Of a stretch of DNA of 64,000 nt, positions 5,154 to 48,001 are shown piece after piece; positions within the stretch are counted from its first letter, which is position 1, and every line of letters begins with the position of its first letter. The stretch covers positions 1 through 64,000 of the IMG/VR virus record IMGVR_UViG_3300042895_001344; one strand, written 5' to 3'. The translations under genes were made by a program, and so were the position numbers. The notes under the pieces were generated by a model. That model searched no databases, had not been told where the DNA came from, and saw only the letters and a program-made list of their open reading frames with translations.

Positions 5154-5685
5154 TTATTCTATATTTTTCTCCGTAAGGAAAATTTTTATTTTCTAATTCA
5201 ACCATATTTAAATAATCTAATATTTTTTGAAAACCATTATTGTAATATAGTTCTTCATATGATATATTAAAATAATCTTTATTTAAATAATTTTCTTTTA
5301 ATCCGTTTTTGATTTGATTAAAATATGATACATCTCCGTCTTTTATTAAATTTTCTTTAAATACCCATGCTTTATCCCAATTATTTGTTTTATTAGCATT
5401 TAACCAAGATTCACTTTGTTCACTTATATTTTCTCTATATAAAATAATTACCTTATCTGATATTTCTATTAATTCTGAAAAATCTGTTTTAATATCATAT
5501 GTTTCTTTAATTAAAATGTGTGGTGTTTTATATTCCCACAATTTTGGTGATACACCATGTTTATACCACTTCCAATTTGGACTTGTTATGGGTTCAAATA
5601 ATGTGGTAAAATTTTTATTACTAAAAAACCAATTAGTTAAGTTGGTTGATCCACTTCGTGGTTCTGCTAGTATTGTTATAACCAT
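5125..5685 (-). CDS. Sulfotransferase-like protein (Stf0/P-loop type)
   Basis: 5'-PSB-like EPRSGSTNL followed by FEP; LYREN; YEEL. Confidence 0.65.
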   Translation of the reverse strand: MVITILAEPRSGSTNLTNWFFSNKNFTTLFEPITSPNWKWYKHGVSPKLWEYKTPHILIKETYDIKTDFSELIEISDKVIILYRENISEQSESWLNANKTNNWDKAWVFKENLIKDGDVSYFNQIKNGLKENYLNKDYFNISYEELYYNNGFQKILDYLNMVELENKNFPYGEKYRINVNKGTSLI

Positions 5686-5771
5686 TATTAAAAAATTGAT
5701 GTTGTTAAAGCTCTCATATTAATTTATTTTATAATTTTAATTATATGTTAAAAATTTATTACATAATAAAA

Positions 5772-6353
5772 TTATAATAATGTATTTTTTTCTTTTACAT
5801 TAGAAACATTAAATTTAAAATTACCAGCAATTACAATTCTATCTTTAGTTGAATTTGGGGAAATTTCAGGTTTGTGAAGTATTTTTGACGAAAATAAAAA
5901 TAATTCGTCTTCTTCAGGTAAAACTGAAAATTCATTTTTATCAAAACTATATGAGAACATACCTTCATTACCATTTAAATTATTTGGCATTTGTACATAA
6001 TAAGTGAAGGTTAAATCAGTTATAATGGAATTTTTATATTTTCCTCCCATTTTTAAATGGTCATGCCATAAAGATTGTTTTGTTTCATTTCTTGATATAA
6101 AAACCCAAGTCTCTAAACAATAATCTATAACCGTATCAATTATACCATTCTTTTTGAGATAATCAATTGCCTTTTTAGTTGCTATTTCTTTTATGAAAGT
6201 GATTTCCTTTGTGACCAATCCTAATGGAGTTTGTATACCAGGAGAATCATAATCACCTGTTTGGGATGAATATAAATTAATATTTTTTTTAAGTTGACTA
6301 ATTAATATTTGTTTATCGTATGGATAATCTATTTTATATTTTTCTATTTTCAT
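5772..6353 (-). CDS. Putative 2OG-Fe(II) oxygenase
   Basis: WHDH, LTFTYYV, LHKP, RIVIAGN. Confidence 0.65.
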   Translation of the reverse strand: MKIEKYKIDYPYDKQILISQLKKNINLYSSQTGDYDSPGIQTPLGLVTKEITFIKEIATKKAIDYLKKNGIIDTVIDYCLETWVFISRNETKQSLWHDHLKMGGKYKNSIITDLTFTYYVQMPNNLNGNEGMFSYSFDKNEFSVLPEEDELFLFSSKILHKPEISPNSTKDRIVIAGNFKFNVSNVKEKNTLL

Positions 6354-8089: not shown

Positions 8090-9625
8090 TTAGAGTTGTA
8101 GACATCTATTTGAATAATATCCACAAGCACCTGTTGCCGAACAAACTTCATACATCTTATCACATCCACCAGACCCTACTCCAATTGAATTACATGGTGC
8201 ACAATATGAATTGTGTTCTACTGCGATATATGATGATACGGTTGCAGAATCACCATCTGTTATGGTTAGGAAAATATGTTCGTCTTGTACACCTATTATA
8301 TATCCACTTAATACTTCGGTTTCGTCTTGTATAGATATCACAGTTTTTTCATTAAATGAAATAGTATCATAATTACCAACATTTATTAATAATAATATAT
8401 CCCCTATTTGTAAATTTGATGTAGTTTGTGTGTTTATATCTTCCCCAATTGTTGCCCACATAACATTGTTATTTCTTTTTATTAAATAAACAGAATTTGA
8501 TGTATCTTTCCAATTTGTTTCGTCACTAAAGTTTAGTGTTGTTAATTTAACTGAAACATCAATTCTTTTTTTAAATGTTATTACATTGGTACTAAATGAT
8601 GAATTTGAAAGAAGTTCATTATAATCAACGTTATATGTCCTCAATTCGTTGGCCTCAGTTATGTTAGGTTGATTTTCATATAGTCTAATTGTTTTAACAG
8701 TATCACCAACCTGTAAATCTTGCCCTGTTTTAAAACTACCATCTGCCATTACAACTAAATCCGTATCAAGTAATTTAGGTTTCACCAACCTTTGTGTCCC
8801 TGTTAAGTATCCGTTTCTATCTACATTAGAAATTTGATGTGTTAGACTATCATATGAGTTGTCATTTAATTCTTGCATAACCTTTAAATTACCATATTTT
8901 TTGTATGCACAGATAGGAATCGATTCTAATGTTGGTGGGTATAAGATATTTAAGGAACGAATAATTGTAATACGTCCTTCGTTTAATTTTTCCTCATTAA
9001 ACAAATATTCCATTAAGAAATAATCTTCATTTACATTATTTGTAATAACTTCATTTAATTCTTCAATATTTGAAACTTTAAAAAATTTTGGGTATACTTC
9101 CCTATCATATATTGGAAATCTTGCTTTTAAAATAAAGTTTGGGTGTATACCATTATTAGGTATGGTCGTTATATTTGATATAACTTGTGAAGTTTCATCC
9201 ATATATGCAAACTTAAACCCAAAATTTTCATTCTGAAACAGTTTTAAAAAATTTACTTTATCTTTGCAGTAAGTTTCGTCAACGATTGCTGAAACATCGT
9301 AGGCACTTCTTACAATTAAGTGATTATCACTATCTTCAATATATGGAATTGTAATACCCCCTAAAGTTTCAATAAATTCATATTCTACCCCCAAATTAAC
9401 ACAAGCCTCATTAAATTTTTCACTTACTTGTGGAATTCCACCGATAAATGTGACCTTTACAAAATTGTTGTTTGATACAAAGCTTATAAATTGTGTCAAA
9501 TTTATGGCCCCCTCAGTCTCAGCCGCTAATCTCACATCCCAACCAATATTGGTGTTTATCTCAATTGGTCTTAAATCACCATTTGAATTGTATGCAAAAT
9601 CTGTCCCTAATAGCAATGTTCTCAT
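8090..9625 (-). CDS. Circularly permuted ATP-grasp-like domain + Hint domain + C-terminal Cys-rich peptide
   Basis: N-terminal TDF..G..RPIEINTN, FILKARFP and FLMEY. Hint-like LLDTDLVVMADGSFKTGQDLQVGDTV, GYIIGVQDEHIF and VEHN|S. Then a 39-aa tail with 6 Cys. Confidence 0.7.
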   Translation of the reverse strand: MRTLLLGTDFAYNSNGDLRPIEINTNIGWDVRLAAETEGAINLTQFISFVSNNNFVKVTFIGGIPQVSEKFNEACVNLGVEYEFIETLGGITIPYIEDSDNHLIVRSAYDVSAIVDETYCKDKVNFLKLFQNENFGFKFAYMDETSQVISNITTIPNNGIHPNFILKARFPIYDREVYPKFFKVSNIEELNEVITNNVNEDYFLMEYLFNEEKLNEGRITIIRSLNILYPPTLESIPICAYKKYGNLKVMQELNDNSYDSLTHQISNVDRNGYLTGTQRLVKPKLLDTDLVVMADGSFKTGQDLQVGDTVKTIRLYENQPNITEANELRTYNVDYNELLSNSSFSTNVITFKKRIDVSVKLTTLNFSDETNWKDTSNSVYLIKRNNNVMWATIGEDINTQTTSNLQIGDILLLINVGNYDTISFNEKTVISIQDETEVLSGYIIGVQDEHIFLTITDGDSATVSSYIAVEHNSYCAPCNSIGVGSGGCDKMYEVCSATGACGYYSNRCLQL

Positions 9626-11009: not shown

Positions 11010-11038
11010 AATATACAATAATTTTTTGTAATTACCAA
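11010..11038 (-). promoter_or_regulatory. Sigma70-like promoter TTGGTA-N17-TATATT
   Basis: Upstream of the ATG at 10991. Confidence 0.5.
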
Positions 11039-11598
11039 TTCTTTCCATTATAATGTGGTTCTATCATTAGTTTAAGCCACTTCTCCTCTTCACTAATCAA
11101 TTTTTCTAATTGAATAGAGTGTTCGTGTGGTAAGGTACTTAATGCCGTTTCTATGGAATTGTATTTAGTTGGTAGTTTAAATTCATATTGGGTCGGTGAC
11201 CATTGTAATTTGGAATCAGTTGGAGTAAGTTGAGACAGATCTCGAAGTTTATAAAATGAAAATCCTAACTTTTTATGTAATGGATAAAGTTTTTTATATA
11301 GATACGGATACCAATGTACGGAACCACCTTCTATCATATTGGTTACAATATCAATTACGTCCAATTGAGGTTTGAATGATAAATCAGTTACTGTACCAGA
11401 TAGAAAATGTTCCATTATAGGTCTATATATAAAAGTAGTACCACTATGTATATGTTTCTCTAAATCAGTTATGTCAAATCCAAAAGTATCTATACGATTT
11501 TTCACATCTAACCCCTCTAACCAACGGGTACCACATTTTAAAGGTGCGATTATATCTAATCCGTTTTTATATATACAACGTTTAAGTCTAATTTTCAT
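11032..11598 (-). CDS. Divergent sulfotransferase-like protein
   Basis: APLKCGTRWL resembles the PKxGTxxL loop; FIYRPIMEHFLS resembles the 3'-PB motif. Confidence 0.4.
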   Translation of the reverse strand: MKIRLKRCIYKNGLDIIAPLKCGTRWLEGLDVKNRIDTFGFDITDLEKHIHSGTTFIYRPIMEHFLSGTVTDLSFKPQLDVIDIVTNMIEGGSVHWYPYLYKKLYPLHKKLGFSFYKLRDLSQLTPTDSKLQWSPTQYEFKLPTKYNSIETALSTLPHEHSIQLEKLISEEEKWLKLMIEPHYNGKNW

Positions 11599-11665: not shown

Positions 11666-11893
11666 CTATGTTTTGGATTTTTTGAAATCTTTTAATCCAA
11701 ATTTTATCCATTTATACCAAATTCTTTCGTGAATATAGTATTGGATGGGTTTATATATTAATTCTACTACCCCAAAAGCCGTTCCAATCTTAATTGATCC
11801 ACTTACCCACCATATTATTAAGAACCCAATAAGGGTACTTATAATACGATATGATATGGTTTTAGCGATGTGTCTCTTCCTTTCTACTATCAT
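11666..11893 (-). CDS. DUF2061 small membrane protein
   Basis: RHIAKTISYRIIST...YYIHERIW; this family is often linked to sulfate-activation genes. Confidence 0.75.
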   Translation of the reverse strand: MIVERKRHIAKTISYRIISTLIGFLIIWWVSGSIKIGTAFGVVELIYKPIQYYIHERIWYKWIKFGLKDFKKSKT

Positions 11894-12441
11894 AATAATG
11901 TTTTAGATTTTTTGGAATTGTTTTTATCAATAACTTTCCAATCAATTAATAAATGAATTCTATCAGTTTCTCCATTATTGATAACCGAATGTGGTTTATC
12001 ACTATTATTTATTTCCCAAATCTCACCTTGTTTCATATTAATCTCTTCACCATCAACTTCAAATATGCACATATCGTTGGTTACAATTGGAATGTGTATT
12101 CTGTTTCTAGAATCAAAATATATATGTGCATCGGTATGTGGTTTTATTTTTTTAGATTTTGGTAAATTTATTAGAATTGCAGTTTCAATATGACCTTCTC
12201 CTATTTTTGTTGTTAAAATATCACCGATACTATCCAAATCATTTTTAAAAATATTATAATCTTTCCAATATTTTAATTGTGTTTTTTCGTTATCCCATAA
12301 AATCGGAATTGTAAATGTTTCCGCGTGGACATGATACGATTCTTGTCTAAATGTAAATTCATTCCAATCTAAATCTTTTAGATGATTTGATATATTGCTA
12401 ACATCATATCTTTCGTAATATTTAAAATTAAAATCTATCAT
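11890..12441 (-). CDS. Aspartyl/asparaginyl beta-hydroxylase-like 2OG oxygenase
   Basis: IKPHTD, RIHIPI, HSVIN.G..RIHL. Confidence 0.8.
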   Translation of the reverse strand: MIDFNFKYYERYDVSNISNHLKDLDWNEFTFRQESYHVHAETFTIPILWDNEKTQLKYWKDYNIFKNDLDSIGDILTTKIGEGHIETAILINLPKSKKIKPHTDAHIYFDSRNRIHIPIVTNDMCIFEVDGEEINMKQGEIWEINNSDKPHSVINNGETDRIHLLIDWKVIDKNNSKKSKTLL

Positions 12442-12824
12442 TTATCATTCATATTAGGATATTCGATAATATCTCCGTTAGAGTCAATATACCCGTTTCT
12501 GATACTTGTACCACTAATTTTAGCAACATCTTCAGGTGGTTCGTGGTAAATAACATCATACCCAACCCCTCTACCATAATTGATACTTTCAATATCGGGA
12601 ATAATAGATATATTAATTTTATGTGAATTTTCCTTAAAAAACGGTTCGTCCGCCAAATCCATCATAACCTGTTGAGCGGTTTTTGGGTTATTCTCATCTG
12701 TCTCCACATTTCTAATGGCTACCCACACATTCTTTCCTTTCTCTAATTGTTGATTAAGTAACCACTCGTGACCCTTGTGCCAATTCTGCCATCTGCCCAC
12801 ATACATCGCATATTTTTTATTCAT
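12438..12824 (-). CDS. Small HxGH nucleotidyltransferase (cytidylyltransferase-like fold); possible minimal ATP sulfurylase
   Basis: GRWQNWHKGH, YGRGVG, ISGTSIR; translationally coupled to cysC. Confidence 0.7.
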   Translation of the reverse strand: MNKKYAMYVGRWQNWHKGHEWLLNQQLEKGKNVWVAIRNVETDENNPKTAQQVMMDLADEPFFKENSHKINISIIPDIESINYGRGVGYDVIYHEPPEDVAKISGTSIRNGYIDSNGDIIEYPNMNDK

Positions 12825-13258
12825 AGTGTTAATTTTTTTAATATTTCATAATAAGAATCTACTTCGGTTTTACCTGTTGTATCCAAATCTATAAAGTTTT
12901 CGGTCGGTGGTTCGTAGTTCTCCACATGAAACTGATTTCTACCTCTATCCTCTGTCGTGTGTACATAAACCTCAATAACGTCTTCTCTATTCTTAAAGTC
13001 CTCCCTTTGGTCTTTATATGGTGAAACTAAGGATACCAAGACCGTAAACCCCTTTTTATTCAAAAATTGAGCAATGTCTTGTGCTCTTTCAATATTTTTT
13101 CTCCTTCCCACCTCAGAATAGTCCTTATTTTGGAAGATATCCCTCAAATCGTCACCATCTATAATAATAGTGTTCTCCTTACCAAAATGGGTTAGGAGGT
13201 TGTTTACTAACGTAGTCTTACCTGATGCGGGTTGTCCGGTGAACCAATATATTGACAT
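12821..13258 (-). CDS. cysC: Adenylyl-sulfate (APS) kinase
   Basis: WFTGQPASGKTT P-loop, DGDDLR, VSLVSPY, YEPP. Confidence 0.85.
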   Translation of the reverse strand: MSIYWFTGQPASGKTTLVNNLLTHFGKENTIIIDGDDLRDIFQNKDYSEVGRRKNIERAQDIAQFLNKKGFTVLVSLVSPYKDQREDFKNREDVIEVYVHTTEDRGRNQFHVENYEPPTENFIDLDTTGKTEVDSYYEILKKLTL

Positions 13259-13266
13259 AATACTAT

Positions 13267-13295
13267 AATATAAAGAAAGTTTTTTAAAAAACCAA
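13267..13295 (-). promoter_or_regulatory. Sigma70-like promoter TTGGTT-N17-TATATT
   Basis: Lies 8 nt upstream of the cysC ATG. Confidence 0.55.
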
Positions 13296-13296
13296 A

Positions 13297-13413
13297 TTAA
13301 TGGTTATAGATAAATGGATCTCTTTTACGTAATTCTTCTAATTTCTTTTTAAATTCCTTCTTTCTCTTTTTGTCGGCAAAGTATTTCTTTACCCAATTGA
13401 TTAGTTTTTTCAT
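13297..13413 (-). CDS. 38-aa basic peptide MKKLINWVKKYFADKKRKKEFKKKLEELRKRDPFIYNH (not in the ORF track)
   Basis: Clean ORF starting 3 nt after the carbamoyltransferase stop. From recall (not searched), a KKLEELRKRDPFIY-type ending occurs in small phage ORFs. Confidence 0.65.
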   Translation of the reverse strand: MKKLINWVKKYFADKKRKKEFKKKLEELRKRDPFIYNH

Positions 13414-13416
13414 ATT

Positions 13417-23371: not shown

Positions 23372-23917
23372 ATGAGTAATAAATGGGATGAGTTCATAGA
23401 AACTCCGTCAAAAAAATTCGGGTATCAAGTACCCATATTTACACCTTCAATTTATAGAGAATATAGAGGTGAGATATTCACGACATTTCATAGTGAGGAA
23501 CATCCTGTAATGAAACACATTCATTATGAGAAATCTGAAATTAGTATTCACGGTAGATTCTCAAAATCATATAAAGGTGTATTAAGAGGATTACATTATG
23601 ATAATAAAACTTGGAAATTGGTACAAGCTGCAGTCGGTGATATATATTTAATAGTGTTAGATATGAGACCAACGTCGGACACCTTCGGTGAATGGGAATC
23701 TTTTATGATAACTGAAAAAGATAGGAACCAGGTATTGGTACCACCAGGATTTGCGAATGGACATTACGCACTAACCGATTGTATGTTTCATTATAACTTA
23801 TTTTACAAAGATGGTTATGTTGATGCTAACGAACAAGGTGTTGTTAAATGGAATGATCCTGAATATCAAATGGAATGGCCAACAGATAAACCAACATTAC
23901 AAAAAAGAGACAGATGA
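23372..23917 (+). CDS. rmlC: dTDP-4-dehydrorhamnose 3,5-epimerase-like cupin
   Basis: VLRGLHY, LDMRPTS, VPPGFANGH, WNDP. Confidence 0.8.
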   Translation: MSNKWDEFIETPSKKFGYQVPIFTPSIYREYRGEIFTTFHSEEHPVMKHIHYEKSEISIHGRFSKSYKGVLRGLHYDNKTWKLVQAAVGDIYLIVLDMRPTSDTFGEWESFMITEKDRNQVLVPPGFANGHYALTDCMFHYNLFYKDGYVDANEQGVVKWNDPEYQMEWPTDKPTLQKRDR

Positions 23918-24549
23918 TTAAAAATTTAGTAGATGAATTACCAATGGTCAATAATCCGTTATGGGATAAAGCTGGTTTAATTCAATTTGAAAGAAAAATG
24001 GCGGATCATTGGGAATCCGGTAAGGTAAAAGGTCCAATACACTTAAGTGGTGGTAATGAAGATGAATTAATTGAAATATTTAAATACATTAAGAAAACAG
24101 ATTGGGTATTCTCAACTTGGAGATCTCATTATCATGCACTACTTAAAGGTATTCCATCTGAATGGTTAGAAGAAGAGATACTTGCTGGTCGTTCTATTAC
24201 TATAGTTAGTAAAGAACATAAGTTTTATTCATCAGCAATAGTTGGTGCGATTATTCCAATTGCAACAGGTGTTGCACTCGCAAATAAGAGAGATGGTAAG
24301 GATGATAAAGTTTGGTGTTTTATTGGTGATATGGCATTTGAAACTGGTGGTTTTTATGAAATGCACAAATACGCTCAACGTTATGATTTACCAATACGTT
24401 TTGTTGTTGAGGATAACGGTGTATCTACAAATACACCTACGGAAGAAACTTGGAATGGAATAAAAAGAGAAGTACCTAATGATGTTATTTGGTATAATTA
24501 TAAAAAAGAGTGGCCGCACTACGGAACAGGAAAATGGGTGATTTTTTAA
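23914..24549 (+). CDS. TPP-dependent enzyme, E1-alpha-like subunit
   Basis: HLSGGNE, WRSHYH, TPP motif GDMA...EDNGVS. Confidence 0.85.
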   Translation: MIKNLVDELPMVNNPLWDKAGLIQFERKMADHWESGKVKGPIHLSGGNEDELIEIFKYIKKTDWVFSTWRSHYHALLKGIPSEWLEEEILAGRSITIVSKEHKFYSSAIVGAIIPIATGVALANKRDGKDDKVWCFIGDMAFETGGFYEMHKYAQRYDLPIRFVVEDNGVSTNTPTEETWNGIKREVPNDVIWYNYKKEWPHYGTGKWVIF

Positions 24550-25797: not shown

Positions 25798-27447
25798 ATG
25801 AAAAACGTGTTGATAACCGGTTGTTCTGGTTTATTAGGAACATATTTAATAAAAAAATTCTTAACAATTCAAAATTCGTATAAAGTAATTGGAGTTGATA
25901 TTGTTGACACTAAATTAAATTTTAAACAGCCTAATTTTGTTTTTGAGAAATTAGATTTAACTGATGAAAAAAATATAAAATATCTTTTTGATAAGTATAA
26001 ACCTGATTTAGTAATCAATTCTTTTGGAATTAAAGGATCTCCATTGAAGGCTAAAAATCAACCTGTTGACTTTTTATACCCATCATTAAAAATTAATACT
26101 GAAATAATTAATCAATCATATAAAAATAATAGTTGGTTAATATTTGTTAGTTCGGTTGGGGTTTACTCTCCTGCTGAGAAATTTGTCGAAGATGATGTAT
26201 GGAAAACTTTACCTTCTGAGAACGATTGGTACCCTTCTTGGTCAAAAAGGGTTGGTGAACTTTTATTAGAGTCATATAAAGTGCAATATGGTTATGATAA
26301 ATGGTCCATCATAAGACCCGCAAACATATTTGGTGATTATGATGATTTTAGTGGTAATGGTACCGTAATATCAACTACAATTAAGAAAATATGGGAATCT
26401 GAAGGGACAATGGAATGTTGGGGAGATGGTAGTCCAACTAGAGACTTTGTATTTGGTGATGACGTTGCGGACGCAATATATAAAATGTATGAAAATAAAA
26501 TTAATGATATTGTAAATTTTGGTTCAGGAGAAGAAATTACTATTAAATCGATGATAGAAGATTTAATATCCATTAGTAAAAAGAATATTTCGATTACTTG
26601 GGATTCTTCAAAACCTAATGGTGATTTAAGAAGACAAATGGATACCACAAAACAAGAAAAATACGATTTATTACCAACAACTTCATTTAAAAGAGCGTTA
26701 GAAAGGACATATTATTACTACATTTCCCAATTTAAAACCGAAGAATTATCTTTTTTAAAAAGAGATTTGTTTGATAATGGATTTTATGTTGGTAAATTAG
26801 ACGAAATTTTTACTGATATAAATACATTAAATGGTAAAATAGAAGAATTAAAATCATTATCAAAAACTAAAGAATACTATAGTGCTAGATTTGATTACAA
26901 TTTAAGTGATAACGAACCTAGATATAAAATTAGTTTAAATGAAGAAGAATATGAAGAAAGGAAAAAATTTGTAAAAGAAAATAATAAAAAAGTGGTTCAA
27001 AAATGGTGGGAAAGCACAAGTCCTGTTTTTAACGAATTAAAAAATTATTTTAATGATGAAGTAGTAAAATGTTTAAAGAAAATTTATCCTGAATCAATTG
27101 GTAATGAATTACATAATTCTAATTTTACATTATATGAAAATGGAGATTTTATCACCCCACATAGAGATGGATTTAATATATCAAGATATTGTGTTATATT
27201 AATTTACTTATCAGATGAAAAAGACTACAATAATGGTGGTGGTGAATTAGTTATAATTGAAAATGGAGTAGAAGTTGTGGTCCCTCCTATAAAAGGTAAC
27301 TTCGCAATATTAGACTTTACAAGAAATAACGCAAATCACGCAGTTAATCCAGTTAAAAATGATTTCGTAAGATATACGTATATTAATTTTTATCAAAATG
27401 AAAAAATACATTTAGAAGAAATGGAAAAAAATACAAAATATAAATAA
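25798..27447 (+). CDS. GDP-fucose-synthase-like SDR fused to a C-terminal 2OG-Fe(II) oxygenase
   Basis: ITGCSGLLG, YPSWSK, WGDGSPTRDF; C-terminal PHRDG, GGGEL, NHAVNPV..RY. Confidence 0.75.
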   Translation: MKNVLITGCSGLLGTYLIKKFLTIQNSYKVIGVDIVDTKLNFKQPNFVFEKLDLTDEKNIKYLFDKYKPDLVINSFGIKGSPLKAKNQPVDFLYPSLKINTEIINQSYKNNSWLIFVSSVGVYSPAEKFVEDDVWKTLPSENDWYPSWSKRVGELLLESYKVQYGYDKWSIIRPANIFGDYDDFSGNGTVISTTIKKIWESEGTMECWGDGSPTRDFVFGDDVADAIYKMYENKINDIVNFGSGEEITIKSMIEDLISISKKNISITWDSSKPNGDLRRQMDTTKQEKYDLLPTTSFKRALERTYYYYISQFKTEELSFLKRDLFDNGFYVGKLDEIFTDINTLNGKIEELKSLSKTKEYYSARFDYNLSDNEPRYKISLNEEEYEERKKFVKENNKKVVQKWWESTSPVFNELKNYFNDEVVKCLKKIYPESIGNELHNSNFTLYENGDFITPHRDGFNISRYCVILIYLSDEKDYNNGGGELVIIENGVEVVVPPIKGNFAILDFTRNNANHAVNPVKNDFVRYTYINFYQNEKIHLEEMEKNTKYK

Positions 27448-30030: not shown

Positions 30031-30576
30031 ATGAGTTCACCAGAATATACCCCATATAAGGACGCACTAACAAATTCAATGACTTACCTTGGTCAACAGG
30101 AAGATACTGTATTTATAGGTCAACAGGTTCTTTGGCACGGTAATCCAATGAGTACGACCATTGGTGATGTTCCTAAAGAAAAACTAATTGAACTTCCCGT
30201 TATGGAAGAATCTCAAATGGGTATGTCATTAGGAATGGCTATGGCTGGTAAGTTTGTCGTTACATTCTACCCTCGTTGGGATTTTGTAATATGTTCAACA
30301 AATCAATTAGTTAACCATGTTGATAAAATTGGATTAATGAGTCAAGGTAAATGGCAACCTAATATGATTATTCGTTTAGGTAAGGGTTCTGATAAACCGT
30401 TAGATCCAGGTCATCAACACAGAGGTAATTACTTTGAGGAATTCAAATCCATGTGTCCTAATATTAATTTTATTGATTTAAAGGATTGGAACGATATTGA
30501 ATTACATTATAAAAACGCATACGAAAAAGGTGGTATTCATGTAATTGTGGAATATCCTGAATTATATTATATTTAA
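30031..30576 (+). CDS. TPP-dependent enzyme, E1-beta/transketolase pyrimidine-binding domain only
   Basis: ELPVMEESQMGMSLGMA, PGHQH; 181 aa with no C-terminal domain. Confidence 0.8.
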   Translation: MSSPEYTPYKDALTNSMTYLGQQEDTVFIGQQVLWHGNPMSTTIGDVPKEKLIELPVMEESQMGMSLGMAMAGKFVVTFYPRWDFVICSTNQLVNHVDKIGLMSQGKWQPNMIIRLGKGSDKPLDPGHQHRGNYFEEFKSMCPNINFIDLKDWNDIELHYKNAYEKGGIHVIVEYPELYYI

Positions 30577-31644
30577 TTTTTTATTAACTAAATGATGGAA
30601 ATTATGTGTAACAATTTTCTTTTTATTTATATAATATAATTCATTCATGAATGAATTAAAAAATGGATGATCTTCTTTAAAAACTTGTATTTTTTTAACT
30701 TCTTCTTCGGTGTATGCACCATCTCCCCAATGTACATGTTGTGTATAATTAATATGTAATTTAAAACTACTACTTTTAAAAATATCTGTCATTATATTAT
30801 AAAACATTCCCATTTCTAAATAATTTTTCTCACTTACAACAAAAGACAATGTTAAATAATTAATAGTATCAATTGTACTTATAAATTTGAGATTACCTAA
30901 TAACATATCCCAATCACCATTTAATCTGGTAATATTTTCGTAAGTATATTTAGTTCCCGCATCTATACTAATTTCAATAGATCCTATATATTTTTTCGCT
31001 TGTAATGAATTCCACATTTTTTCATTTAACATTTTACCGTTAGTAATAATGTTTATATATTGTAAATTTGGATATTTTTTAATATCAAAATTAATTAAAT
31101 AGTTTCTATAAATTTTAGAATAAAATGGATCTCCACTACCAGTTATTAATATTGTTTTTATATGACTGGCAAATTTAGTCTCAATTTCATAAAGAGTTTT
31201 TAATTTATCTTGATGTTTTTTAGAATTTTCATCATCATTTGAAACTAAGTCCAATCTACAAGATGGACATTTAAAATTACAACTTCTATCAAAACCAAAT
31301 AAAACGTTCTCAGGATGGGTTTCTATTTTTTCAACATCTTCGATTGAGTTAATTTTATGATAGTTTAGAAATTTTTCTTTTTCTATGAAATTAATTGGTA
31401 TTTCGTTTGTGTTTAATAATCTATTTAAACTAGGACACACATTATGATCACAATGTCTATATGTTCCATCTAATACTGATTTCCGTATATCAATTGCCGT
31501 ATTAGTATCCCACTCTATTTCTTCTTTGCCGTCTCTAATACTTGTTGGACACCATGAGGGGCAACAAACATACACTTGATATGGTTGTAAGTCCATATAA
31601 CTAAACGGGTTAGTACAAACATATTTATTTAACTTATCCTTCAT
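30562..31644 (-). CDS. Radical SAM protein with N-terminal twitch/SPASM-like Cys cluster
   Basis: CTNPF, CCPSWC, CNFKCPSC, GSGDPF. Likely ATG at 31644. Confidence 0.8.
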   Translation of the reverse strand: MKDKLNKYVCTNPFSYMDLQPYQVYVCCPSWCPTSIRDGKEEIEWDTNTAIDIRKSVLDGTYRHCDHNVCPSLNRLLNTNEIPINFIEKEKFLNYHKINSIEDVEKIETHPENVLFGFDRSCNFKCPSCRLDLVSNDDENSKKHQDKLKTLYEIETKFASHIKTILITGSGDPFYSKIYRNYLINFDIKKYPNLQYINIITNGKMLNEKMWNSLQAKKYIGSIEISIDAGTKYTYENITRLNGDWDMLLGNLKFISTIDTINYLTLSFVVSEKNYLEMGMFYNIMTDIFKSSSFKLHINYTQHVHWGDGAYTEEEVKKIQVFKEDHPFFNSFMNELYYINKKKIVTHNFHHLVNKKLNII

Positions 31645-32062
31645 TTTCTTCTTTTGTTGGCCAACTAACTTCCCAATCTTTAAAATCAGCCGCAATACAA
31701 TCAATTTTATAATCTTTTCTTCCACCAACAACTTCTTGTATTTTATTCTTGGCGGTATTTCTTATACCATTTAATCCGTGAGTTAACGATAACATACTTG
31801 GTCCTTCTTTTCCACTTCTTACATTAGATTCGTTATGCCAAATGTGTAAATTCATTTGTGCACATACAATAACCGCTCTCAACATCTCACCAGTTATAAC
31901 AACATCTTTCTCACTTAAAATAAGTTGTATGTCGTGTGTGATATCAGCAATTTCTTTAGCGTATTCTTCTTTATGTTCAGTTATAAACACTTCTTTTAAT
32001 TGTACAATCGAAAGTCTATCAATTAACTCCGATAATGTTGGTAAAAATCTTCTTTGTTCCAT
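31634..32062 (-). CDS. Helical hypothetical protein (DUF6165-like)
   Basis: LPTLSELIDRLSIVQLK N-terminal motif; coupled to neighbouring genes. Confidence 0.5.
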   Translation of the reverse strand: MEQRRFLPTLSELIDRLSIVQLKEVFITEHKEEYAKEIADITHDIQLILSEKDVVITGEMLRAVIVCAQMNLHIWHNESNVRSGKEGPSMLSLTHGLNGIRNTAKNKIQEVVGGRKDYKIDCIAADFKDWEVSWPTKEENEG

Positions 32063-33027
32063 TATATTAATTTGTTTTGTTTTTTTATTTCTGATAAATA
32101 ATCATTTTTTATTATAAAATCATACATAGTTTTTGCAATCTCAGTATGAGCTTTTATTGACGGGTGTGCACAGGGTGTTATATATCCACCTTTTGACATT
32201 TTTTTATTTGAGTACGCGTAATCGTAATATTTTGCCGATGATTCTACACCTATTAAATCGTCTCTATTCTCTAAATGACATAACATGTCAGCAACACAAG
32301 AAAAACCTCCTGGTTTGAGGTAACTATCCCAATTAACCATAGTCATCAATTCATTAAGATAATGAATATTACCATAAAGATAGTTTTCCTTTGTTTTTTC
32401 TCCTCTTATTTTTTTATAAAATGATTCATTGTTATAATCTGTTGAGAAAGCACTTGTTAATATTAATTTTGCATTATTTGCTTTACACCATGTTTGAGCT
32501 TCATGAATGTTCAATATTAATTCTATTGTTGCGGATCTATCTGAATAGATATGAGTAAGATACTCATTCCATAAACCTCTTTCATCTCCGACATGTGAAT
32601 CGGTTGGCCACATTGTTTTAAAATGAATATGTTGATTTAAATTTTTATGTACAAAATCAAATCTCTCCATACCTGTTAACATGAAAATAACTATTTTTTC
32701 TTTTATATTTTCAAATTTAAACGCGGGGTGCATTGATAATTGTTTAACAGATGCTCGATTACCTCTACCTACCATACCTAAATTAATCGACATATAATCT
32801 GTTAAATGGTTTTTACATAATTGATTTACCCATGAGTTTTCATAAAAGATTGTATCCACGATTTTTTCGTCGGATTCAGGAACATTTTTCATATCCCAAT
32901 TATATTTTTTCCATATATCTTCACTACAAGCACCTTGTCCTTGTGTAAAACTATCTCCAATACCAATTATAACTTTAGAATCTGTAGTTAATTTTCTAAT
33001 TAAATCGTATTTATACCAATCAAACAT
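32062..33027 (-). CDS. SGNH-like protein
   Basis: IGDSFTQGQG, GRGN, AHPS. Confidence 0.6.
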   Translation of the reverse strand: MFDWYKYDLIRKLTTDSKVIIGIGDSFTQGQGACSEDIWKKYNWDMKNVPESDEKIVDTIFYENSWVNQLCKNHLTDYMSINLGMVGRGNRASVKQLSMHPAFKFENIKEKIVIFMLTGMERFDFVHKNLNQHIHFKTMWPTDSHVGDERGLWNEYLTHIYSDRSATIELILNIHEAQTWCKANNAKLILTSAFSTDYNNESFYKKIRGEKTKENYLYGNIHYLNELMTMVNWDSYLKPGGFSCVADMLCHLENRDDLIGVESSAKYYDYAYSNKKMSKGGYITPCAHPSIKAHTEIAKTMYDFIIKNDYLSEIKKQNKLI

Positions 33028-34313
33028 TAAATTAAATTTTTAATTTTATTTGTATGATTACAATAATTTTTTAAATTGGTATACGCTTCAGGTAATTTAA
33101 ATAATTTACCAACCAATACTGATTGATTATATTTTATAATTTCTTCCATAGAAGAAAACCATTTTAATTTATCTTGAATATCATCAACTTTTTTAATTGA
33201 CTCAATAATATATTGTAACCTTTCATGTGTCGGTAAATGATCATATCCCTCATCTATAAAACCATCAAATGTTTTATATCCAATTTTTTTCATCATTTCC
33301 ATACTATCCTTATTCCCCATTATAATAAATGGACTATTACATGCAATAACTTTAAATGTTTTTTCACTTAAAAACATGGTTTCGTCACTATCACCACAAT
33401 GAGCTTCACTAATAACCGTCATAAATGTATCTAATGAAATTTGATTATTGAATCTTCTAATATAGAAATTATCATCAAATTCATCGTTACTTTTTTCATG
33501 TACTAAAAGTGGTAATCCAACTAATATTTCGTCTATACGTTCTTTACTTATTTCTTGTCCTTCAAATATATAACCATGTTTATCGAATGAGTTCATACTA
33601 ACTAATCCCTTGTTAATTAATCCCGCTTGATGTAAGTAATTATAAAACCAAACTCTTTGTAATCTAATTCTTTTATTTAAACAAGCGAAAGTTTTAATAT
33701 GAGATATATTTTCTGTTTTATGTGTGATGTGATCTTCAAATGTTGGTAATGGGTGGTTATCTCTGATTTTTTCATAACACATCATCCCCATATCTAATTC
33801 AAAATGTGAATATGGTATAACTTTAATCTTTTCAATTACATCATTGTCTTTTGTCCATTTTTCATATGTTTCATCGGCAATCATATTACCAGTAACATAA
33901 ATGATACGTGTTGGTGAAACATTCCATTCTTTACATTCTTTATGAAACCACTCCCATAACCAAGGTGTTTGATACCCCTCTAAACTTTGATCCAACATAA
34001 CATAAGCTTTATTATTTCTTAAGTCAGTTAGATATTTTTCATTAAGATAAAAGAAAAAACTTTTAACCCTAGGGTCATACCCTGTCCAATCATCGGGACT
34101 ATGGTTTACTGATGTTGGGATTATATACTCTTCATCAATTATTTCATCTACCGAATAATAATTTAACTCTCCATTAATATTTGATAATTGGCAATTAATG
34201 TTTGTTGCGGTTAATAATGGTGATATACCAAACCTATTAATCCCTGATCTATTAATATCTTTACAGGAAGTAAAATTAGCCAGATTAAACTTATCTTCAA
34301 AAACAAAATTCAT
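33027..34313 (-). CDS. GT10-like family putative glycosyltransferase
   Basis: LNKRIRLQR and TVISEA..LSEKTFKVI..PFIIMG..GYD. Confidence 0.45.
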   Translation of the reverse strand: MNFVFEDKFNLANFTSCKDINRSGINRFGISPLLTATNINCQLSNINGELNYYSVDEIIDEEYIIPTSVNHSPDDWTGYDPRVKSFFFYLNEKYLTDLRNNKAYVMLDQSLEGYQTPWLWEWFHKECKEWNVSPTRIIYVTGNMIADETYEKWTKDNDVIEKIKVIPYSHFELDMGMMCYEKIRDNHPLPTFEDHITHKTENISHIKTFACLNKRIRLQRVWFYNYLHQAGLINKGLVSMNSFDKHGYIFEGQEISKERIDEILVGLPLLVHEKSNDEFDDNFYIRRFNNQISLDTFMTVISEAHCGDSDETMFLSEKTFKVIACNSPFIIMGNKDSMEMMKKIGYKTFDGFIDEGYDHLPTHERLQYIIESIKKVDDIQDKLKWFSSMEEIIKYNQSVLVGKLFKLPEAYTNLKNYCNHTNKIKNLI

Positions 34314-35761
34314 TATTTATTGTAATTTTCTTTATCTGACACATAAACTCCAGGTTCATAGTGTGTTATTCTACCATCAGTAATTTTTACATCTTGTATT
34401 GTGTTGTCAATCACTAATGAATTATACCAATCTTCTAACTCAGGGAATGTCTCCACGAAATTCTTGTTTCTACGAATATCATATTGAACATAGAAGCTTT
34501 TAAAGTCATGATATTGTATTGACATGTCCATTTCACTTGTATTATGACCTCTATTAACAACTTCAATATAATCAATCAATCTTTGAATTTGAGCACCTTC
34601 ATGCATATTGATTAACGGATTCTTTTTATGTTTTCTCCACCACATTGATAACTTACCGTGTAAATCGTGTTTAATATCGTCCGGTAATGTAAGTGGTGAC
34701 ATAAACGCCGGCCATCTTAAAATGTTAAAGTCAACAATTGGTTTATGTGTTCCGTATTTCTCTTTTAATTTCAACATATCATCTAAAAATTCAGTAATAC
34801 TAAATAAACACAAACTATTAATTGTCATCATAATAACAACTTGTCTAATTTTAGCACTCTCAATTACTTTAACTAAATTACTTCTCCATAGTTCATAATT
34901 TAAACCATCCCTAATATATTCCGCTTGCTCACCATAAGCTTCACAACTTGTATACAAATCGAATTCTTTGATGTCTAATTCGTGAGATATACTAATTAAC
35001 CTATTCACCGTCGTTTCGTTAAGACCTAGGTTAGAATTGACTGCAAGTCGTAAATTAGGGGACGGATATTGTTTCATTGTATCCATGAACTGCCAAAAAT
35101 TACGAGATTGTGATGGTTCTCCACCAGTTACACGTATTTCCATTAATTTTTGTGACAATTCAGGCCACCATTTTAAGAAAGCATCAACATATGGATTGTT
35201 CTCATTGTATTTACCGTAAATCTCAGACCAAGATCCGTCAGCATAATATGCCCCCGCACTTGTTGTTTTAAATTTCTGATATGGACCATTATCTTTAATG
35301 TCTTTACCCCATGTTGTTGAGTATCCTGAATTACAATATGAACAAGCAAAATTACATGTTCTATCAAAAGATACCTCGATAGTCTGTGGTACAATATCCG
35401 CATCCCAAGGTAGTTCTTTTAATGCCGCAATATCTTCAGAACTATAAATTTGACTTTTATATATACGATCCGAAATATTATTTCTACCGATATCTTCAAT
35501 CTTCCAACAGTAAGAACATTCCGCCGGTTTAACACCTTCTAACATCATTTTACGAATTTCTTTCTTAAAATCAGTATTATGTAATGCTGCTGGATTTGTT
35601 TTTATTGCTTCAACATCAATGGGATGTGGTAATGGTAAATGACACGAGTTTGTAAATCCATGACCTAAGTGTAAACTAACATTTAACCATTTAGCCGCAC
35701 AAAAACTACAACTTACTTTATTTAAATGTTCATCTCTCCAGTTTGCTAATTGTTCTGACAT
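34313..35761 (-). CDS. Twitch-domain radical SAM protein
   Basis: CAAKW, SCH, CSYCW, CNFACSYC, TGGEP. Confidence 0.85.
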   Translation of the reverse strand: MSEQLANWRDEHLNKVSCSFCAAKWLNVSLHLGHGFTNSCHLPLPHPIDVEAIKTNPAALHNTDFKKEIRKMMLEGVKPAECSYCWKIEDIGRNNISDRIYKSQIYSSEDIAALKELPWDADIVPQTIEVSFDRTCNFACSYCNSGYSTTWGKDIKDNGPYQKFKTTSAGAYYADGSWSEIYGKYNENNPYVDAFLKWWPELSQKLMEIRVTGGEPSQSRNFWQFMDTMKQYPSPNLRLAVNSNLGLNETTVNRLISISHELDIKEFDLYTSCEAYGEQAEYIRDGLNYELWRSNLVKVIESAKIRQVVIMMTINSLCLFSITEFLDDMLKLKEKYGTHKPIVDFNILRWPAFMSPLTLPDDIKHDLHGKLSMWWRKHKKNPLINMHEGAQIQRLIDYIEVVNRGHNTSEMDMSIQYHDFKSFYVQYDIRRNKNFVETFPELEDWYNSLVIDNTIQDVKITDGRITHYEPGVYVSDKENYNK

Positions 35762-35795
35762 TTTTATATTTTTATTAATGTAATTAAAATTATTG

Positions 35796-36542
35796 TTATT
35801 TCATATATTGTATTGGTACTTTTTCTAAAAAGTTACAATTTTTTGATTCATCATAAATTATATCTAAATTGTTAATAATCTCAAAATCGTATAAACAAAT
35901 AAGATCTTCATAATAATATTTTTCTACTAAACCTACTAATTCAGATTGATATAAATCTTTTGCATCATTTATATCTGACGACTTCATTAAAATAGAAAAA
36001 TGATTTAAGTCCATTTCCCCATAATATCTTTGTTCTTTCAACCCGCAATCAGGACTCGAACACCCTAAATATAAACCGTCCGACCTATAATCTTCAATTA
36101 ATTGTCCTTCAAATGTTAGTTCATTTACTTCGACAAAGTTTTTATATAATATAAATTTATTTAATTTTCTAATAACAGATAGTGTTACACCATTTTCAAC
36201 GTCCTTCTTATCCACATCTTTAAAATGTATATATTTAAATTCATCTTCTCCATTGTCTTTTCTTACCCAAAATTCCCAAGCAACATCGTTAGTTTCACTA
36301 TTATATGATAATCCCATATTTTTTCCAGGTTTACCGTATATCATACAAATTTTATCAATTTTATATTTTTCTTTAATTGTAAAATTACAGGTAATTATAA
36401 ATTTTTCTTTATGTTGAAAATCATACACATTATAATTTTTTTCTTTATCAAAAATAGTAACGTATTGATTATCGTGATGTTCACTTAAATCCCAATTATA
36501 TTTAATCCAATAAGGGTGTTTATATTTTATTCTCATATTCAA
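35796..36542 (-). CDS. Degenerate LamG/concanavalin A-like domain protein
   Basis: Paralogous to the N-terminus of the next gene: GKPGKNMGLSY, LYLGC, YYGEMDLNHFSI, CLYDF. Confidence 0.45.
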   Translation of the reverse strand: MNMRIKYKHPYWIKYNWDLSEHHDNQYVTIFDKEKNYNVYDFQHKEKFIITCNFTIKEKYKIDKICMIYGKPGKNMGLSYNSETNDVAWEFWVRKDNGEDEFKYIHFKDVDKKDVENGVTLSVIRKLNKFILYKNFVEVNELTFEGQLIEDYRSDGLYLGCSSPDCGLKEQRYYGEMDLNHFSILMKSSDINDAKDLYQSELVGLVEKYYYEDLICLYDFEIINNLDIIYDESKNCNFLEKVPIQYMK

Positions 36543-43277: not shown

Positions 43278-43306
43278 AATATAAGAAAAATATTTCTATA
43301 AACCAA
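43278..43306 (-). promoter_or_regulatory. Sigma70-like promoter TTGGTT-N17-TATATT at the start of the enzyme operon
   Basis: Lies 6 nt upstream of the ATG at 43271 and overlaps the end of the LamG gene. Confidence 0.55.
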
Positions 43307-44009: not shown

Positions 44010-44022
44010 AATTATTTATTAT

Positions 44023-44220
44023 TTAATCGTAATATACTTCTTTTATTGTTAATGTAACACCAGAATAAATAGAATATCCATTCATTTGATTTATTTTATT
44101 TTCACATTCTTCTACAGTATTAAATTCATATATTCCATCACCTATTATTGGTGGATGTAATATTAATGGGTCTCCAACATGTTCTATTTTTTTCTTTAAT
44201 ATTTGATATTTTATTGTCAT
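44023..44220 (-). CDS. Small hypothetical protein
   Basis: 65-aa ORF within the operon. Confidence 0.5.
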   Translation of the reverse strand: MTIKYQILKKKIEHVGDPLILHPPIIGDGIYEFNTVEECENKINQMNGYSIYSGVTLTIKEVYYD

Positions 44221-44226
44221 ATAATA

Positions 44227-44946: not shown

Positions 44947-44958
44947 AATTTTTTATTT

Positions 44959-45726: not shown

Positions 45727-45744
45727 ATCTTATTATTTTCCATA

Positions 45745-46104: not shown

Positions 46105-46113
46105 AATTTTTTT

Positions 46114-47145: not shown

Positions 47146-47172
47146 ATTGATAAATATTTGTTTTATTGTGTT

Positions 47173-47991: not shown

Positions 47992-48001
47992 AATTAATTT
48001 T

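What the first reader, a model, noticed from the sequence alone, without database searches (positions are those of the whole stretch)
11666..13295. cysC - small HxGH nucleotidyltransferase - AspH - DUF2061 unit: possible minimal ATP sulfurylase giving a two-gene PAPS supply
Seen: a promoter-led, ATGA-coupled unit of cysC, a 128-aa GRWQNWHKGH/YGRGVG/ISGTSIR protein, an AspH-like oxygenase and DUF2061. No sat or cysDN gene is present in the window. Established: Sat-type ATP sulfurylases belong to the HxxH nucleotidyltransferase superfamily, with QxRNxxHxxH, GRDHAG and ISGTxxR motifs. Inference: this protein is a stripped-down ATP sulfurylase feeding the three sulfotransferases. Viral cysC would then serve phage sulfation rather than host sulfur assimilation.
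Basis: partly seen in the sequence, partly recalled or inferred. Interest (0 to 1): 0.65.

Follow-up and report, generated by a model that had tools for sequence, protein, structure and literature searches.

The report
Candidate third type of ATP sulfurylase
A large T4-like phage carries a five-gene sulfation cassette whose 128-residue enzyme, derived from an NAD-synthesis enzyme, most likely makes activated sulfate (APS), and its family takes the place of both known ATP sulfurylases in many marine microbes and over 500 viral contigs.

Summary
The four overlapping genes exist as described. They are a short APS kinase, a 128-aa HxGH nucleotidyltransferase (NT), an AspH-like oxygenase and DUF2061. 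The next gene downstream (11032-11598) has a PAPS-sulfotransferase fold.

The NT is not a trimmed Sat. By sequence and fold its nearest relatives are archaeal NMN adenylyltransferases. Their NMN-binding segment is deleted, and two new near-invariant arginines (R38, R85) appear.

- NT relatives are fused to, or sit directly after, an APS kinase in 75 of 80 cellular loci and 72 of 80 viral loci. The fusions occur in both orders.
- Their commonest neighbours are CysQ-type PAP phosphatases and sulfotransferases.
- In two independent clades, 0 of 7 NT-bearing genomes have Sat or CysD. Of the APS-kinase genomes that lack the NT, 58 of 60 have one.

I conclude, at about 0.75 confidence, that this is an unrecognised NMNAT-derived ATP sulfurylase. 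With the kinase it would give the phage its own PAPS supply for sulfation.

Two parts of the finding were not confirmed. Only one sulfotransferase was found, not three, and the "promoter" is no better than chance. No enzyme activity has been measured.

The parts
12821..13258 (-). Short (145 aa) APS kinase. It is expected to phosphorylate the 3'-OH of APS to give PAPS.
   Evidence: PF01583 E 1.5e-17, above the gathering score. All 21 PDB sequence hits are APS kinases. P-loop, DGDxxR, S48, R52, N55, SPY, R85 and YExP are kept. About 23 residues of the lid (KGLYKK...FTG) are missing. The same short form sits next to the NT in cellular genomes.
12438..12824 (-). 128-aa HxGH nucleotidyltransferase (NT), the candidate NMNAT-derived ATP sulfurylase (ATP + sulfate -> APS + PPi).
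   Evidence: No Pfam hit at threshold. The family profile matches archaeal NMNAT at E 3.5e-16. AF2 model pLDDT 93.4. Fold Z 9.4 to NMNAT 1f9a and Z 7.6 to ATP sulfurylase 1v47. Family-wide conserved residues: G10 R11 H16 G18 H19 R38 P47 D77 G84 R85 V87 G88 Y89 S104 T106 R109. Fusion, adjacency and phyletic evidence.
11890..12441 (-). AspH/LpxO-like 2-oxoglutarate oxygenase. By inference it makes the hydroxyl group that is then sulfated.
   Evidence: PF05118 E 1e-14. Weak LpxO match. Homologues lie in seven of the fetched cellular NT loci, directly upstream of DUF2061-APSK and NT in four Chitinophagaceae. It is among the commoner immediate neighbours, 4 of 131.
11666..11893 (-). DUF2061 small membrane protein. 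By inference it anchors the PAPS-making enzymes at the membrane.
   Evidence: PF09834 E 4e-15. Found within 3 kb of the NT in 37 of 80 viral loci, and next to the APSK-NT fusion in phage L004. Fused to the N-terminus of the APS kinase in Chitinophagaceae loci L034, L048, L053 and L077.
11032..11598 (-). 188-aa sulfotransferase-fold protein, the probable consumer of the PAPS.
   Evidence: No Pfam hit. In 35 homologues P19 K21 C22 G23 T24 R25 and R59...S67 (R-x7-S) are invariant, which resembles the 5'-PSB and 3'-PB PAPS-binding motifs. AF2 pLDDT 89. The top 24 structural matches are all PAPS sulfotransferases, the best being heparan sulfate 2-O-sulfotransferase at Z 8.0 over 162 residues. Foldseek's list is also almost all sulfotransferases.
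13259..13295 (-). 37-bp spacer upstream of the kinase. No promoter is supported here.
   Evidence: Only a 9-of-12 sigma-70-like match, and such sites occur in the region at the chance rate.

Best explanation
The unit is a self-contained sulfation cassette. The 128-aa NT is an ATP:sulfate adenylyltransferase that evolved from an archaeal-type NMN adenylyltransferase.

Proposed mechanism (inferred; no activity has been measured):
1. The NT keeps the ATP-handling motifs GRxQxxHxGH and ISxTxxR. It has lost the ~30-residue NMN-binding segment and gained two near-invariant arginines (R38, R85) suited to a small oxyanion.
2. It makes APS and pyrophosphate from ATP and sulfate.
3. The translationally coupled short APS kinase converts APS to PAPS at once. 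This pulls an unfavourable equilibrium, as in fused PAPS synthases.
4. The sulfotransferase-fold protein at 11032-11598 transfers the sulfate to an acceptor. The likely acceptor is a glycan or lipid made by the surrounding glycan island, possibly at a hydroxyl introduced by the AspH-like oxygenase.
5. DUF2061 may hold the machinery at the membrane.

What is shown: the gene order, the folds, the conserved residues, the fusions and the phyletic complementarity.
For: 1. Fusions. NT homologues are fused to full-length, high-scoring APS kinases in both orders. Examples: P0295 APSK-NT (231 bits) and P0282 NT-APSK (180 bits).
2. Linkage. In 80 cellular loci from more than 10 phyla, 46 are fused and 29 have an APS kinase directly upstream. 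In 80 viral loci, 72 are linked.
3. Neighbours. The commonest immediate neighbour families are Inositol_P/CysQ (8), Sulfotransfer_3 (7) and Sulfotransfer_1 (6). In phage L006 an APSK-NT fusion is directly followed by Sulfotransfer_2. In Chitinophagaceae the order is AspH, DUF2061-APSK, NT, Sulfotransfer_3. In Nitrospiraceae the NT directly follows a CysH-type PAPS_reduct gene.
4. A missing gene is filled. Of 50 NT-bearing genomes, 37-38 have neither Sat nor CysD. One of them is a closed 4.53-Mb chromosome.
5. Controls. In Chitinophagaceae, 18 of 18 APSK+ NT- genomes have CysD (13) or Sat (5), against 0 of 4 NT+ genomes. In a Marinimicrobia order, 40 of 42 APSK+ NT- genomes have Sat or CysD, against 0 of 3 NT+.
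6. Chemistry fits. The NT has the same fold superfamily and reaction type as Sat; the whole model aligns to the catalytic cores of ATP sulfurylases (Z 6.2-7.6, 110-117 residues). One homologue gives a sub-threshold PF01747 hit.
7. Relaxed constraint. The only two lesions in R38 or R85 among the 80 cellular loci (L008 R85H; L045 R38M) are in genomes that have CysD.
8. Acceptor side. The phage has a sulfotransferase-fold gene directly downstream.
Against: - No biochemical data exist for any member.
- 12 of 50 NT-bearing genomes also have Sat or CysD. In Acidobacteriota locus L007 the NT-APSK fusion sits beside cysDN, so the NT is not always the only route.
- The nearest relatives are NMNATs, and sulfate-binding residues could not be mapped in 3D because no coordinates were available.
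- Many genomes are incomplete MAGs or SAGs.
- The cellular loci were fetched with motif patterns, which inflates the apparent invariance of those motifs.
- The Salvovirus and DLP_6 phage fusions show no recognisable sulfotransferase within about 6 kb.
- The predicted kinase-NT complex got only weak support: ipSAE 0.32 against a best control of 0.00.
Confidence: 0.75

Rival explanations
1. The NT is a non-catalytic or accessory partner of the APS kinase. It might replace the missing lid or sense nucleotides, while APS comes from the host.
For: The phage kinase lacks the lid. The NT co-occurs with cysDN in L007. Complex prediction gave a weak pass.
Against: The catalytic HxGH and ISxTxxR motifs and four arginines are near-invariant. 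The NT is also fused to full-length kinases that keep their lid. Genomes with the NT lack any other APS source.
Confidence: 0.08
2. The pair makes a PAPS-like donor from a different acceptor or nucleotide. Examples would be another oxyanion, or a pathway like Campylobacter O-methyl-phosphoramidate synthesis, where an APS-kinase homologue phosphorylates CDP-amidate.
For: An APS-kinase homologue with a non-APS substrate is named in the literature: cytidine diphosphoramidate kinase Cj1415. That it is an APS-kinase homologue is from my own knowledge. The phage kinase is divergent: 64 bits, below the NCBIfam equivalog cut-off.
Against: No glutamine-kinase or amidotransferase genes were found in the window. 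The neighbours are PAPS sulfotransferases and CysQ. Many fused kinases score 170-230 bits as APS kinase.
Confidence: 0.07
3. It is an NAD or CoA salvage pair: a NadR-like ribosylnicotinamide kinase plus NMNAT, or PPAT plus a 3'-kinase. JGI names the NT 'phosphopantetheine adenylyltransferase'.
For: The best sequence and fold matches are NMNAT, NadM, NadR and PPAT. In Salvovirus the fusion lies next to a COG3236/NADAR-type gene and MazG.
Against: The NMN-binding segment is deleted. Scores are far below the NCBIfam cut-offs: 21.6 against 181 bits for NMNAT, and 26 against 104 bits for PPAT. The kinase matches only APS kinases in the PDB. Genomic context is sulfation, not NAD or CoA metabolism.
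Confidence: 0.04

Closest known systems
Sat-type (homo-oligomeric) ATP sulfurylase, PF01747, including the ATPS domain of PAPS synthases
   Same: Same superfamily (HxxH/HxGH nucleotidyltransferase fold), same proposed reaction, the same ISGTxxR-type motif, and the same habit of being fused or adjacent to APS kinase.
   Different: No profile-level membership. Profile-profile comparison (hhalign) gives only 55% probability over 60 columns. The QxRN register, GRDHAG and the N-terminal PUA-like domain are absent. The NT is about 110 residues, against about 210 for the catalytic core and 380-600 for the whole protein.
Archaeal-type NMN adenylyltransferase (NadM; MJ0541 1f9a, M. thermoautotrophicum 1ej2)
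   Same: Closest by sequence (E 3.5e-16) and by fold (Z 9.4, 26% identity). Both share GRxQPxHxGH, the NP.T helix cap, the IPDIE strand and SGTxIR.
   Different: About 30 residues between IPDIE and GYEV, which is the NMN-binding part in NMNAT (own knowledge of 1ej2), are replaced by S-I/V-N-Y-G-R-x-V. IGSAQ becomes x-V-R-D. The genomic context is PAPS synthesis, not NAD metabolism.
CysDN heterodimeric ATP sulfurylase
   Same: Both supply APS to CysC. The two are mutually exclusive in most genomes examined.
   Different: Unrelated fold (PAPS-reductase-like CysD plus the GTPase CysN), and it is driven by GTP.
Bifunctional PAPS synthase (animal PAPSS; bacterial Sat-CysC)
   Same: The two-step sulfate to APS to PAPS logic is carried in one polypeptide or one operon. 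Fusions occur in both domain orders.
   Different: The adenylyltransferase module comes from a different family and is about a third of the size. The phage kinase is a lid-less short form.

Membership tests
Sat-type ATP sulfurylase (PF01747) | Significant match to the family profile | tested here: not met
   No PF01747 hit for the window protein. No ATP sulfurylase among the 60 listed PDB profile matches. hhalign against 4 Sat sequences gives 55% probability over 60 columns.
Sat-type ATP sulfurylase (PF01747) | QxRNxxHxxH motif in register, and GRDHAG | tested here: not met
   HxxH is present, but G10/R11/W12 align to Sat Q/T/R. YGRGVG is a different motif. Real Sat sequences fetched here show QTRNPMHRAH and GRDHAG/S.
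Sat-type ATP sulfurylase (PF01747) | Forms APS from ATP and sulfate | not testable with these tools
   Supported only indirectly, by context and phyletic complementarity.
HxGH nucleotidyltransferase superfamily | Rossmann-like fold with an N-terminal HxGH motif and a C-terminal ISxTxxR motif | tested here: met
   Model pLDDT 93.4. Z 7-9.4 to NMNAT, PPAT, cytidylyltransferases and ATP sulfurylases. H16-K-G-H19 and I103-S-G-T-S-I-R109 are present.
Archaeal NMNAT (TIGR01527 / NadM) | Score above the curated cut-off, and an NMN-binding segment | tested here: not met
   21.6 bits against a cut-off of 181.2. The profile alignment breaks between IPDIE and GYEV, where about 30 NMNAT residues have no counterpart.
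Phosphopantetheine adenylyltransferase (the name JGI gives) | Score above the curated cut-off | tested here: not met
   26.2 bits against 104, and only residues 10-42 match.
APS kinase (PF01583), for the 145-aa protein | Profile match; P-loop, DGDxxR and SPY motifs | tested here: met
   64.5 bits against a gathering score of 21.1. The motifs are conserved. All 21 PDB hits are APS kinases.
APS kinase (PF01583), for the 145-aa protein | Full-length domain with the mobile lid; NCBIfam equivalog score | tested here: not met
   Only profile positions 4-114 of 152 are matched. 64 bits against 138.7 for TIGR00455. About 23 lid residues are absent.
PAPS-dependent sulfotransferase, for ORF 11032-11598 | Sulfotransferase fold with 5'-PSB (PKxGT) and 3'-PB (R-x7-S) motifs | tested here: met
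   The top 24 structural hits are all sulfotransferases, Z up to 8.0. PxKCGTR and R59...S67 are invariant. There is no Pfam hit, so membership rests on fold and motifs.
O-methyl-phosphoramidate pathway (Cj1415-Cj1418 type) | Accompanying glutamine kinase and gamma-glutamyl-CDP-amidate hydrolase | tested here: not met
   No such domains in the window ORFs scanned.

The most novel reading that the evidence does not exclude
This NMNAT-derived mini-enzyme is a third, independently evolved class of ATP sulfurylase. It would be the sole sulfate-activating enzyme in many marine Bacteroidota, Marinimicrobia, Marine Group II/III archaea, Planctomycetota, Omnitrophota and CPR/DPANN lineages. It would also be packaged with a lid-less APS kinase and DUF2061 as a portable PAPS factory in several hundred viral contigs. 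Current annotation would therefore miss sulfate activation in all of these.
Probability: 0.65. Interest if true: 0.85.

Novelty: new variant of a known kind. Interest (0 to 1): 0.75.

Why it matters
Sulfate activation is taken to have two non-homologous solutions, Sat and CysDN (stated in PMC6286981). A third, very small enzyme would matter in several ways:
- It would change how sulfur metabolism and sulfated glycan or lipid synthesis are inferred from genomes of abundant marine and candidate-phyla microbes.
- It would explain 'orphan' APS kinases.
- It would re-read viral 'cysC' genes, usually listed as sulfur-assimilation auxiliary genes, as parts of a virus-owned sulfation pathway.
- It would offer a compact two-gene PAPS module for biotechnology.
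- As an example of enzyme evolution, it would show a cofactor-binding segment deleted and two arginines gained, turning an NAD enzyme into a sulfate-activating one.

Tried and rejected
- Pfam and PHROGs scans of the NT alone. Pfam gave nothing at threshold. PHROGs gave the useful lead phrog_10255, a kinase-NT fusion.
- Megablast of the region against the phage collection: no match.
- The search for related loci with the 67-sequence alignment failed because it was too diverse. A 10-sequence alignment worked.
- Motif scans for sulfotransferases in the phage found only ORF 11032-11598, plus a DUF5672 false lead.
- The ESM Atlas search for ORF 11032-11598 was uninformative.
- Pfam Sulfotransfer_1 and Sulfotransfer_3 searches of the whole record were negative.
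- The promoter and terminator scan was at chance level.
- Literature searches found no paper describing an NMNAT-like ATP sulfurylase or a phage PAPS cassette. The library is incomplete, so this is not proof of novelty.
- Complex prediction for kinase + NT gave 'weak support': ipSAE 0.32 against a best control of 0.00, partner pLDDT 83, and runs agreeing in at least 93% of contacts. At that mark 58 of 80 solved complexes and 2 of 110 mismatched pairs passed, but passes at 0.60 or under came from only 7 of those solved complexes and from both mismatches. I do not use it as evidence.
- The NadR-like, PPAT and phosphoramidate readings were considered and rejected on context and on the missing substrate-binding parts (see rival explanations).
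Full report
**Setting.** The window is the first 64 kb of a 217-kb IMG/VR viral record that CheckV rates 65% complete. The virus is T4-like, with a Gp23 capsid match at 178.5-180 kb, and no psbA was found. Positions 1-48 kb form a large glycan-modification island. It holds GT4/FkbM and GT7 glycosyltransferases, methyltransferases, a carbamoyltransferase, DUF5672, several 2OG oxygenases, GDSL esterases, sugar epimerases/dehydratases, RmlC, TPP-enzyme pieces and radical-SAM proteins.

**The observation.** Four minus-strand ORFs lie at 12821-13258, 12438-12824, 11890-12441 and 11666-11893. Each pair is joined by an ATGA overlap. Pfam gives APS_kinase, nothing for the 128-aa protein, Asp_Arg_Hydrox and DUF2061. 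Neither Sat nor a CysD/PAPS_reduct domain occurs anywhere in the 217 kb. The proposed promoter is not distinguishable from chance.

**What the 128-aa protein is related to.**
- NCBIfam gives only sub-threshold matches to archaeal PPAT, NMNAT and NadM.
- A search of 1.84 billion representative proteins found 782 relatives at E up to 0.001, many of them 250-380 aa long.
- In a 67-sequence alignment G10, H19 and R109 are invariant. R11, H16, G18, R38, P47, D77, G84, R85, V87, G88, Y89, S104 and T106 are at least 90% conserved.
- The family profile hits archaeal NMN adenylyltransferases first (MJ0541, E 3.5e-16), then NadM and PPAT. No ATP sulfurylase appears among the 60 listed matches.
- The AlphaFold model (pLDDT 93.4) is closest to NMNAT 1f9a (Z 9.4, 109 residues, 26% identity), PPAT (9.3), NadM (9.1) and NadR (8.7).
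- ATP sulfurylases follow at Z 7.6 (T. thermophilus), 6.7 (human PAPSS1), 6.3 (soybean) and 6.2 (yeast). They align over essentially the whole model.
- A profile-profile comparison with four real Sat sequences gives 55% probability over 60 columns around HxxH.
- The NMNAT alignment breaks between IPDIE and GYEV. About 30 residues there, the NMN-binding part of NMNAT by my knowledge of the 1ej2 and 1f9a structures, are replaced by S-I/V-N-Y-G-R-x-V. NMNAT's IGSAQ loop becomes x-V-R-D.
- So the ATP-binding apparatus is inherited from NMNAT. The NMN site is gone, and two new near-invariant arginines appear.

**Linkage to APS kinase.**
- PHROG 10255 matches the kinase with its first half and the NT with its second half.
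- Pfam scans of ten long homologues show NT fused to APS kinase in both orders. The kinase scores reach 231 bits over the full profile.
- The fused form also occurs in cultured Salvovirus phages of Xylella, Xanthomonas and Stenotrophomonas, and in Stenotrophomonas phage DLP_6.
- A pattern scan of one genome per GTDB species found at least 551 cellular occurrences. The phyla include Acidobacteriota, Bacteroidota, Marinimicrobia, Nitrospirota, Planctomycetota, Omnitrophota, Verrucomicrobiota, Patescibacteria, Marine Group II/III archaea, Methanosarcinales and DPANN.
- Of the 80 loci fetched, 46 are fusions and 29 have an APS kinase immediately upstream on the same strand. Only 5 have none nearby.
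- Two of those five (Nitrospiraceae) have the NT directly after a CysH-type PAPS_reduct gene. One (Verrucomicrobiota) has it directly after a Sulfotransfer_1 gene.
- In IMG/VR at least 577 contigs carry the NT. Of 80 loci, 72 have the kinase fused, adjacent or one gene away, and 37 have DUF2061 within 3 kb, usually overlapping the NT stop codon.

**Neighbourhood theme.**
- Among 131 immediate neighbours of the NT/kinase unit, the most frequent families are Inositol_P (the CysQ PAP-phosphatase family, 8), Sulfotransfer_3 (7), Sulfotransfer_1 (6), UDP-glucose dehydrogenase (6), methyltransferases, and Asp_Arg_Hydrox (4).
- Phage locus L006 has the APSK-NT fusion directly followed by Sulfotransfer_2.
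- Phage L004 has the fusion followed by DUF2061.
- Four Chitinophagaceae loci have the order AspH, DUF2061-APSK fusion, NT, Sulfotransfer_3. These are the same four parts as in the window, followed by a sulfotransferase.

**The missing-gene test.**
- Of 50 NT-bearing genomes, 4 have a PF01747 match and 9 a CysD match, and one genome (G021) has both. That leaves 37-38 with neither (G002 has an ambiguous fragment). One of these is a closed 4.53-Mb Pyrinomonadaceae chromosome.
- Two of the four 'Sat' matches (Nitrospiraceae Sat-CysC fusions) have degenerate catalytic motifs: GWDYAS or GQDYAS, YRVH and ISATQVH.
- Control 1: in a 61-genome sample of Chitinophagaceae, the NT occurs only in G022. The 18 other APS-kinase-positive genomes all have CysD (13) or Sat (5). 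The four NT-bearing Chitinophagaceae (G022, G031, G035, G047) have neither.
- Control 2: in a 61-genome sample of a Marinimicrobia order, 45 genomes have APS kinase. The three with the NT (G023, G026, G150) lack Sat and CysD. Of the 42 without the NT, 39 have Sat beside or fused to the kinase and one has CysD with CysNC. No ATP sulfurylase was found in the other two, and one of those has only a fragmentary kinase hit.
- Pooled: 0 of 7 against 58 of 60. This is the pattern expected if the NT replaces Sat or CysDN.
- Among the 80 cellular loci, the only changes in the two family-specific arginines (R85H in L008, R38M in L045) are in genomes that have CysD. That suggests relaxed constraint, but there are only two cases, and the loci were selected by motif patterns.

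**The kinase.** All 21 PDB sequence matches are APS kinases. The P-loop, DGDxxR, S48, R52, N55, SPY, R85, R105 and YExP are kept. About 23 residues of the mobile lid are missing. The short form is not a phage oddity. It occurs next to the NT in Marine Group III archaea, Marinimicrobia and Flavobacteriales. Whether it needs the NT to close its active site is unknown. Complex prediction gave only weak support, ipSAE 0.32 against a best control of 0.00.

**The acceptor side.** ORF 11032-11598 lies 67 bp downstream of DUF2061 and has no Pfam match. Its 35-sequence alignment has invariant PxKCGTR and R59...S67. Its model (pLDDT 89) matches only PAPS sulfotransferases in the top 24 ranks (Z up to 8.0, 162 residues), and Foldseek agrees.

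**Interpretation.** The best-supported reading is a portable sulfation cassette:
- the NT makes APS from ATP and sulfate;
- the short kinase makes PAPS from APS;
- the sulfotransferase uses the PAPS;
- the AspH-like oxygenase possibly makes the hydroxyl that is sulfated;
- DUF2061 possibly tethers the enzymes to the membrane.

The last two roles are inference from conserved co-occurrence only. The NT's activity is also inferred. It rests on fusions, operon context, phyletic complementarity and a compatible fold and chemistry, not on an assay.

Three facts keep the confidence near 0.75 rather than higher:
- 12 of 50 NT-bearing genomes also have Sat or CysD.
- In one locus the NT-APSK fusion sits beside cysDN (L007).
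- No sulfotransferase is recognisable near the Salvovirus fusions.

**Comparison with what is known.** The field recognises two non-homologous ATP sulfurylases, Sat and CysDN (PMC6286981). The present family fails the membership tests for Sat (profile and motifs) and for NMNAT and PPAT (curated cut-offs and substrate segment). It is a clear member of the HxGH nucleotidyltransferase superfamily. Pfam and NCBIfam (June 2026) have no model for it, JGI calls it PPAT, and PHROGs calls the fusion 'kinase'. My literature searches found no description of it. I therefore rate it a new variant of a known kind: a new enzyme family proposed for a known reaction in a known pathway.

Noticed in passing
window 38616-41461: Two adjacent ~475-aa proteins combine eukaryote-type beta-1,4-galactosyltransferase domains (Glyco_transf_7N/7C) with a Laminin_G_3 lectin-like domain. 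Five more Laminin_G_3 proteins follow at 43296-48682. This is unusual for a phage and suggests glycan-decorated or glycan-binding virion fibres.
   Followed up: no
window 30562-38619: Three weak radical-SAM matches (389, 482 and 699 aa) lie in a run of ORFs that otherwise have no family match.
   Followed up: no
window 23914-24549 and 30031-30576: There are split TPP-enzyme pieces: an E1_dh/TPP-binding part and a transketolase pyrimidine-binding part. They flank sugar epimerase/dehydratase genes, one of which is fused to a 2OG oxygenase (25798-27447). This may be a branched or keto-sugar pathway.
   Followed up: no
window 13296-13414 (minus strand): A 39-aa Lys/Arg-rich ORF lies between the carbamoyltransferase gene and the kinase. 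It was read in the sequence and has no assignment.
   Followed up: no
window 8090-9625: A 511-aa ORF with a Cys-rich C-terminus has no Pfam match.
   Followed up: no
L090, L091 (Nitrospiraceae genomes G009, G010): The Sat-CysC fusion proteins have degenerate Sat catalytic motifs (GWDYAS/GQDYAS, YRVH, ISATQVH). The same genomes carry the NT directly after a CysH-type gene. The Sat domain may be inactive and the NT may be the working ATP sulfurylase there.
   Followed up: partly
L002 (Xylella phage Bacata, NC_052973.1) 5578-6318; L003 (Stenotrophomonas phage DLP_6) 4590-5321: Cultured phages encode a ~245-aa kinase-NT fusion with the family motifs (GRYQPxHxGH, GRDVGY, ISATKIR). It lies beside a COG3236/GTP-cyclohydrolase-II-annotated gene and MazG in Bacata, and near an Fe(II) oxygenase in DLP_6. 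No sulfotransferase is recognisable nearby. These are tractable systems for testing the enzyme.
   Followed up: partly
L024, L030, L041, L043, L044 and similar cellular loci: The short-kinase ORF overlaps the start of the NT ORF by 25-45 nt, rather than by the 4-nt ATGA overlap seen in the phage.
   Followed up: no
L136, L137, L142, L154, L157, L166 and other viral loci: In 14 viral loci one small unassigned gene (~110 aa) sits between the APS kinase and the NT.
   Followed up: no
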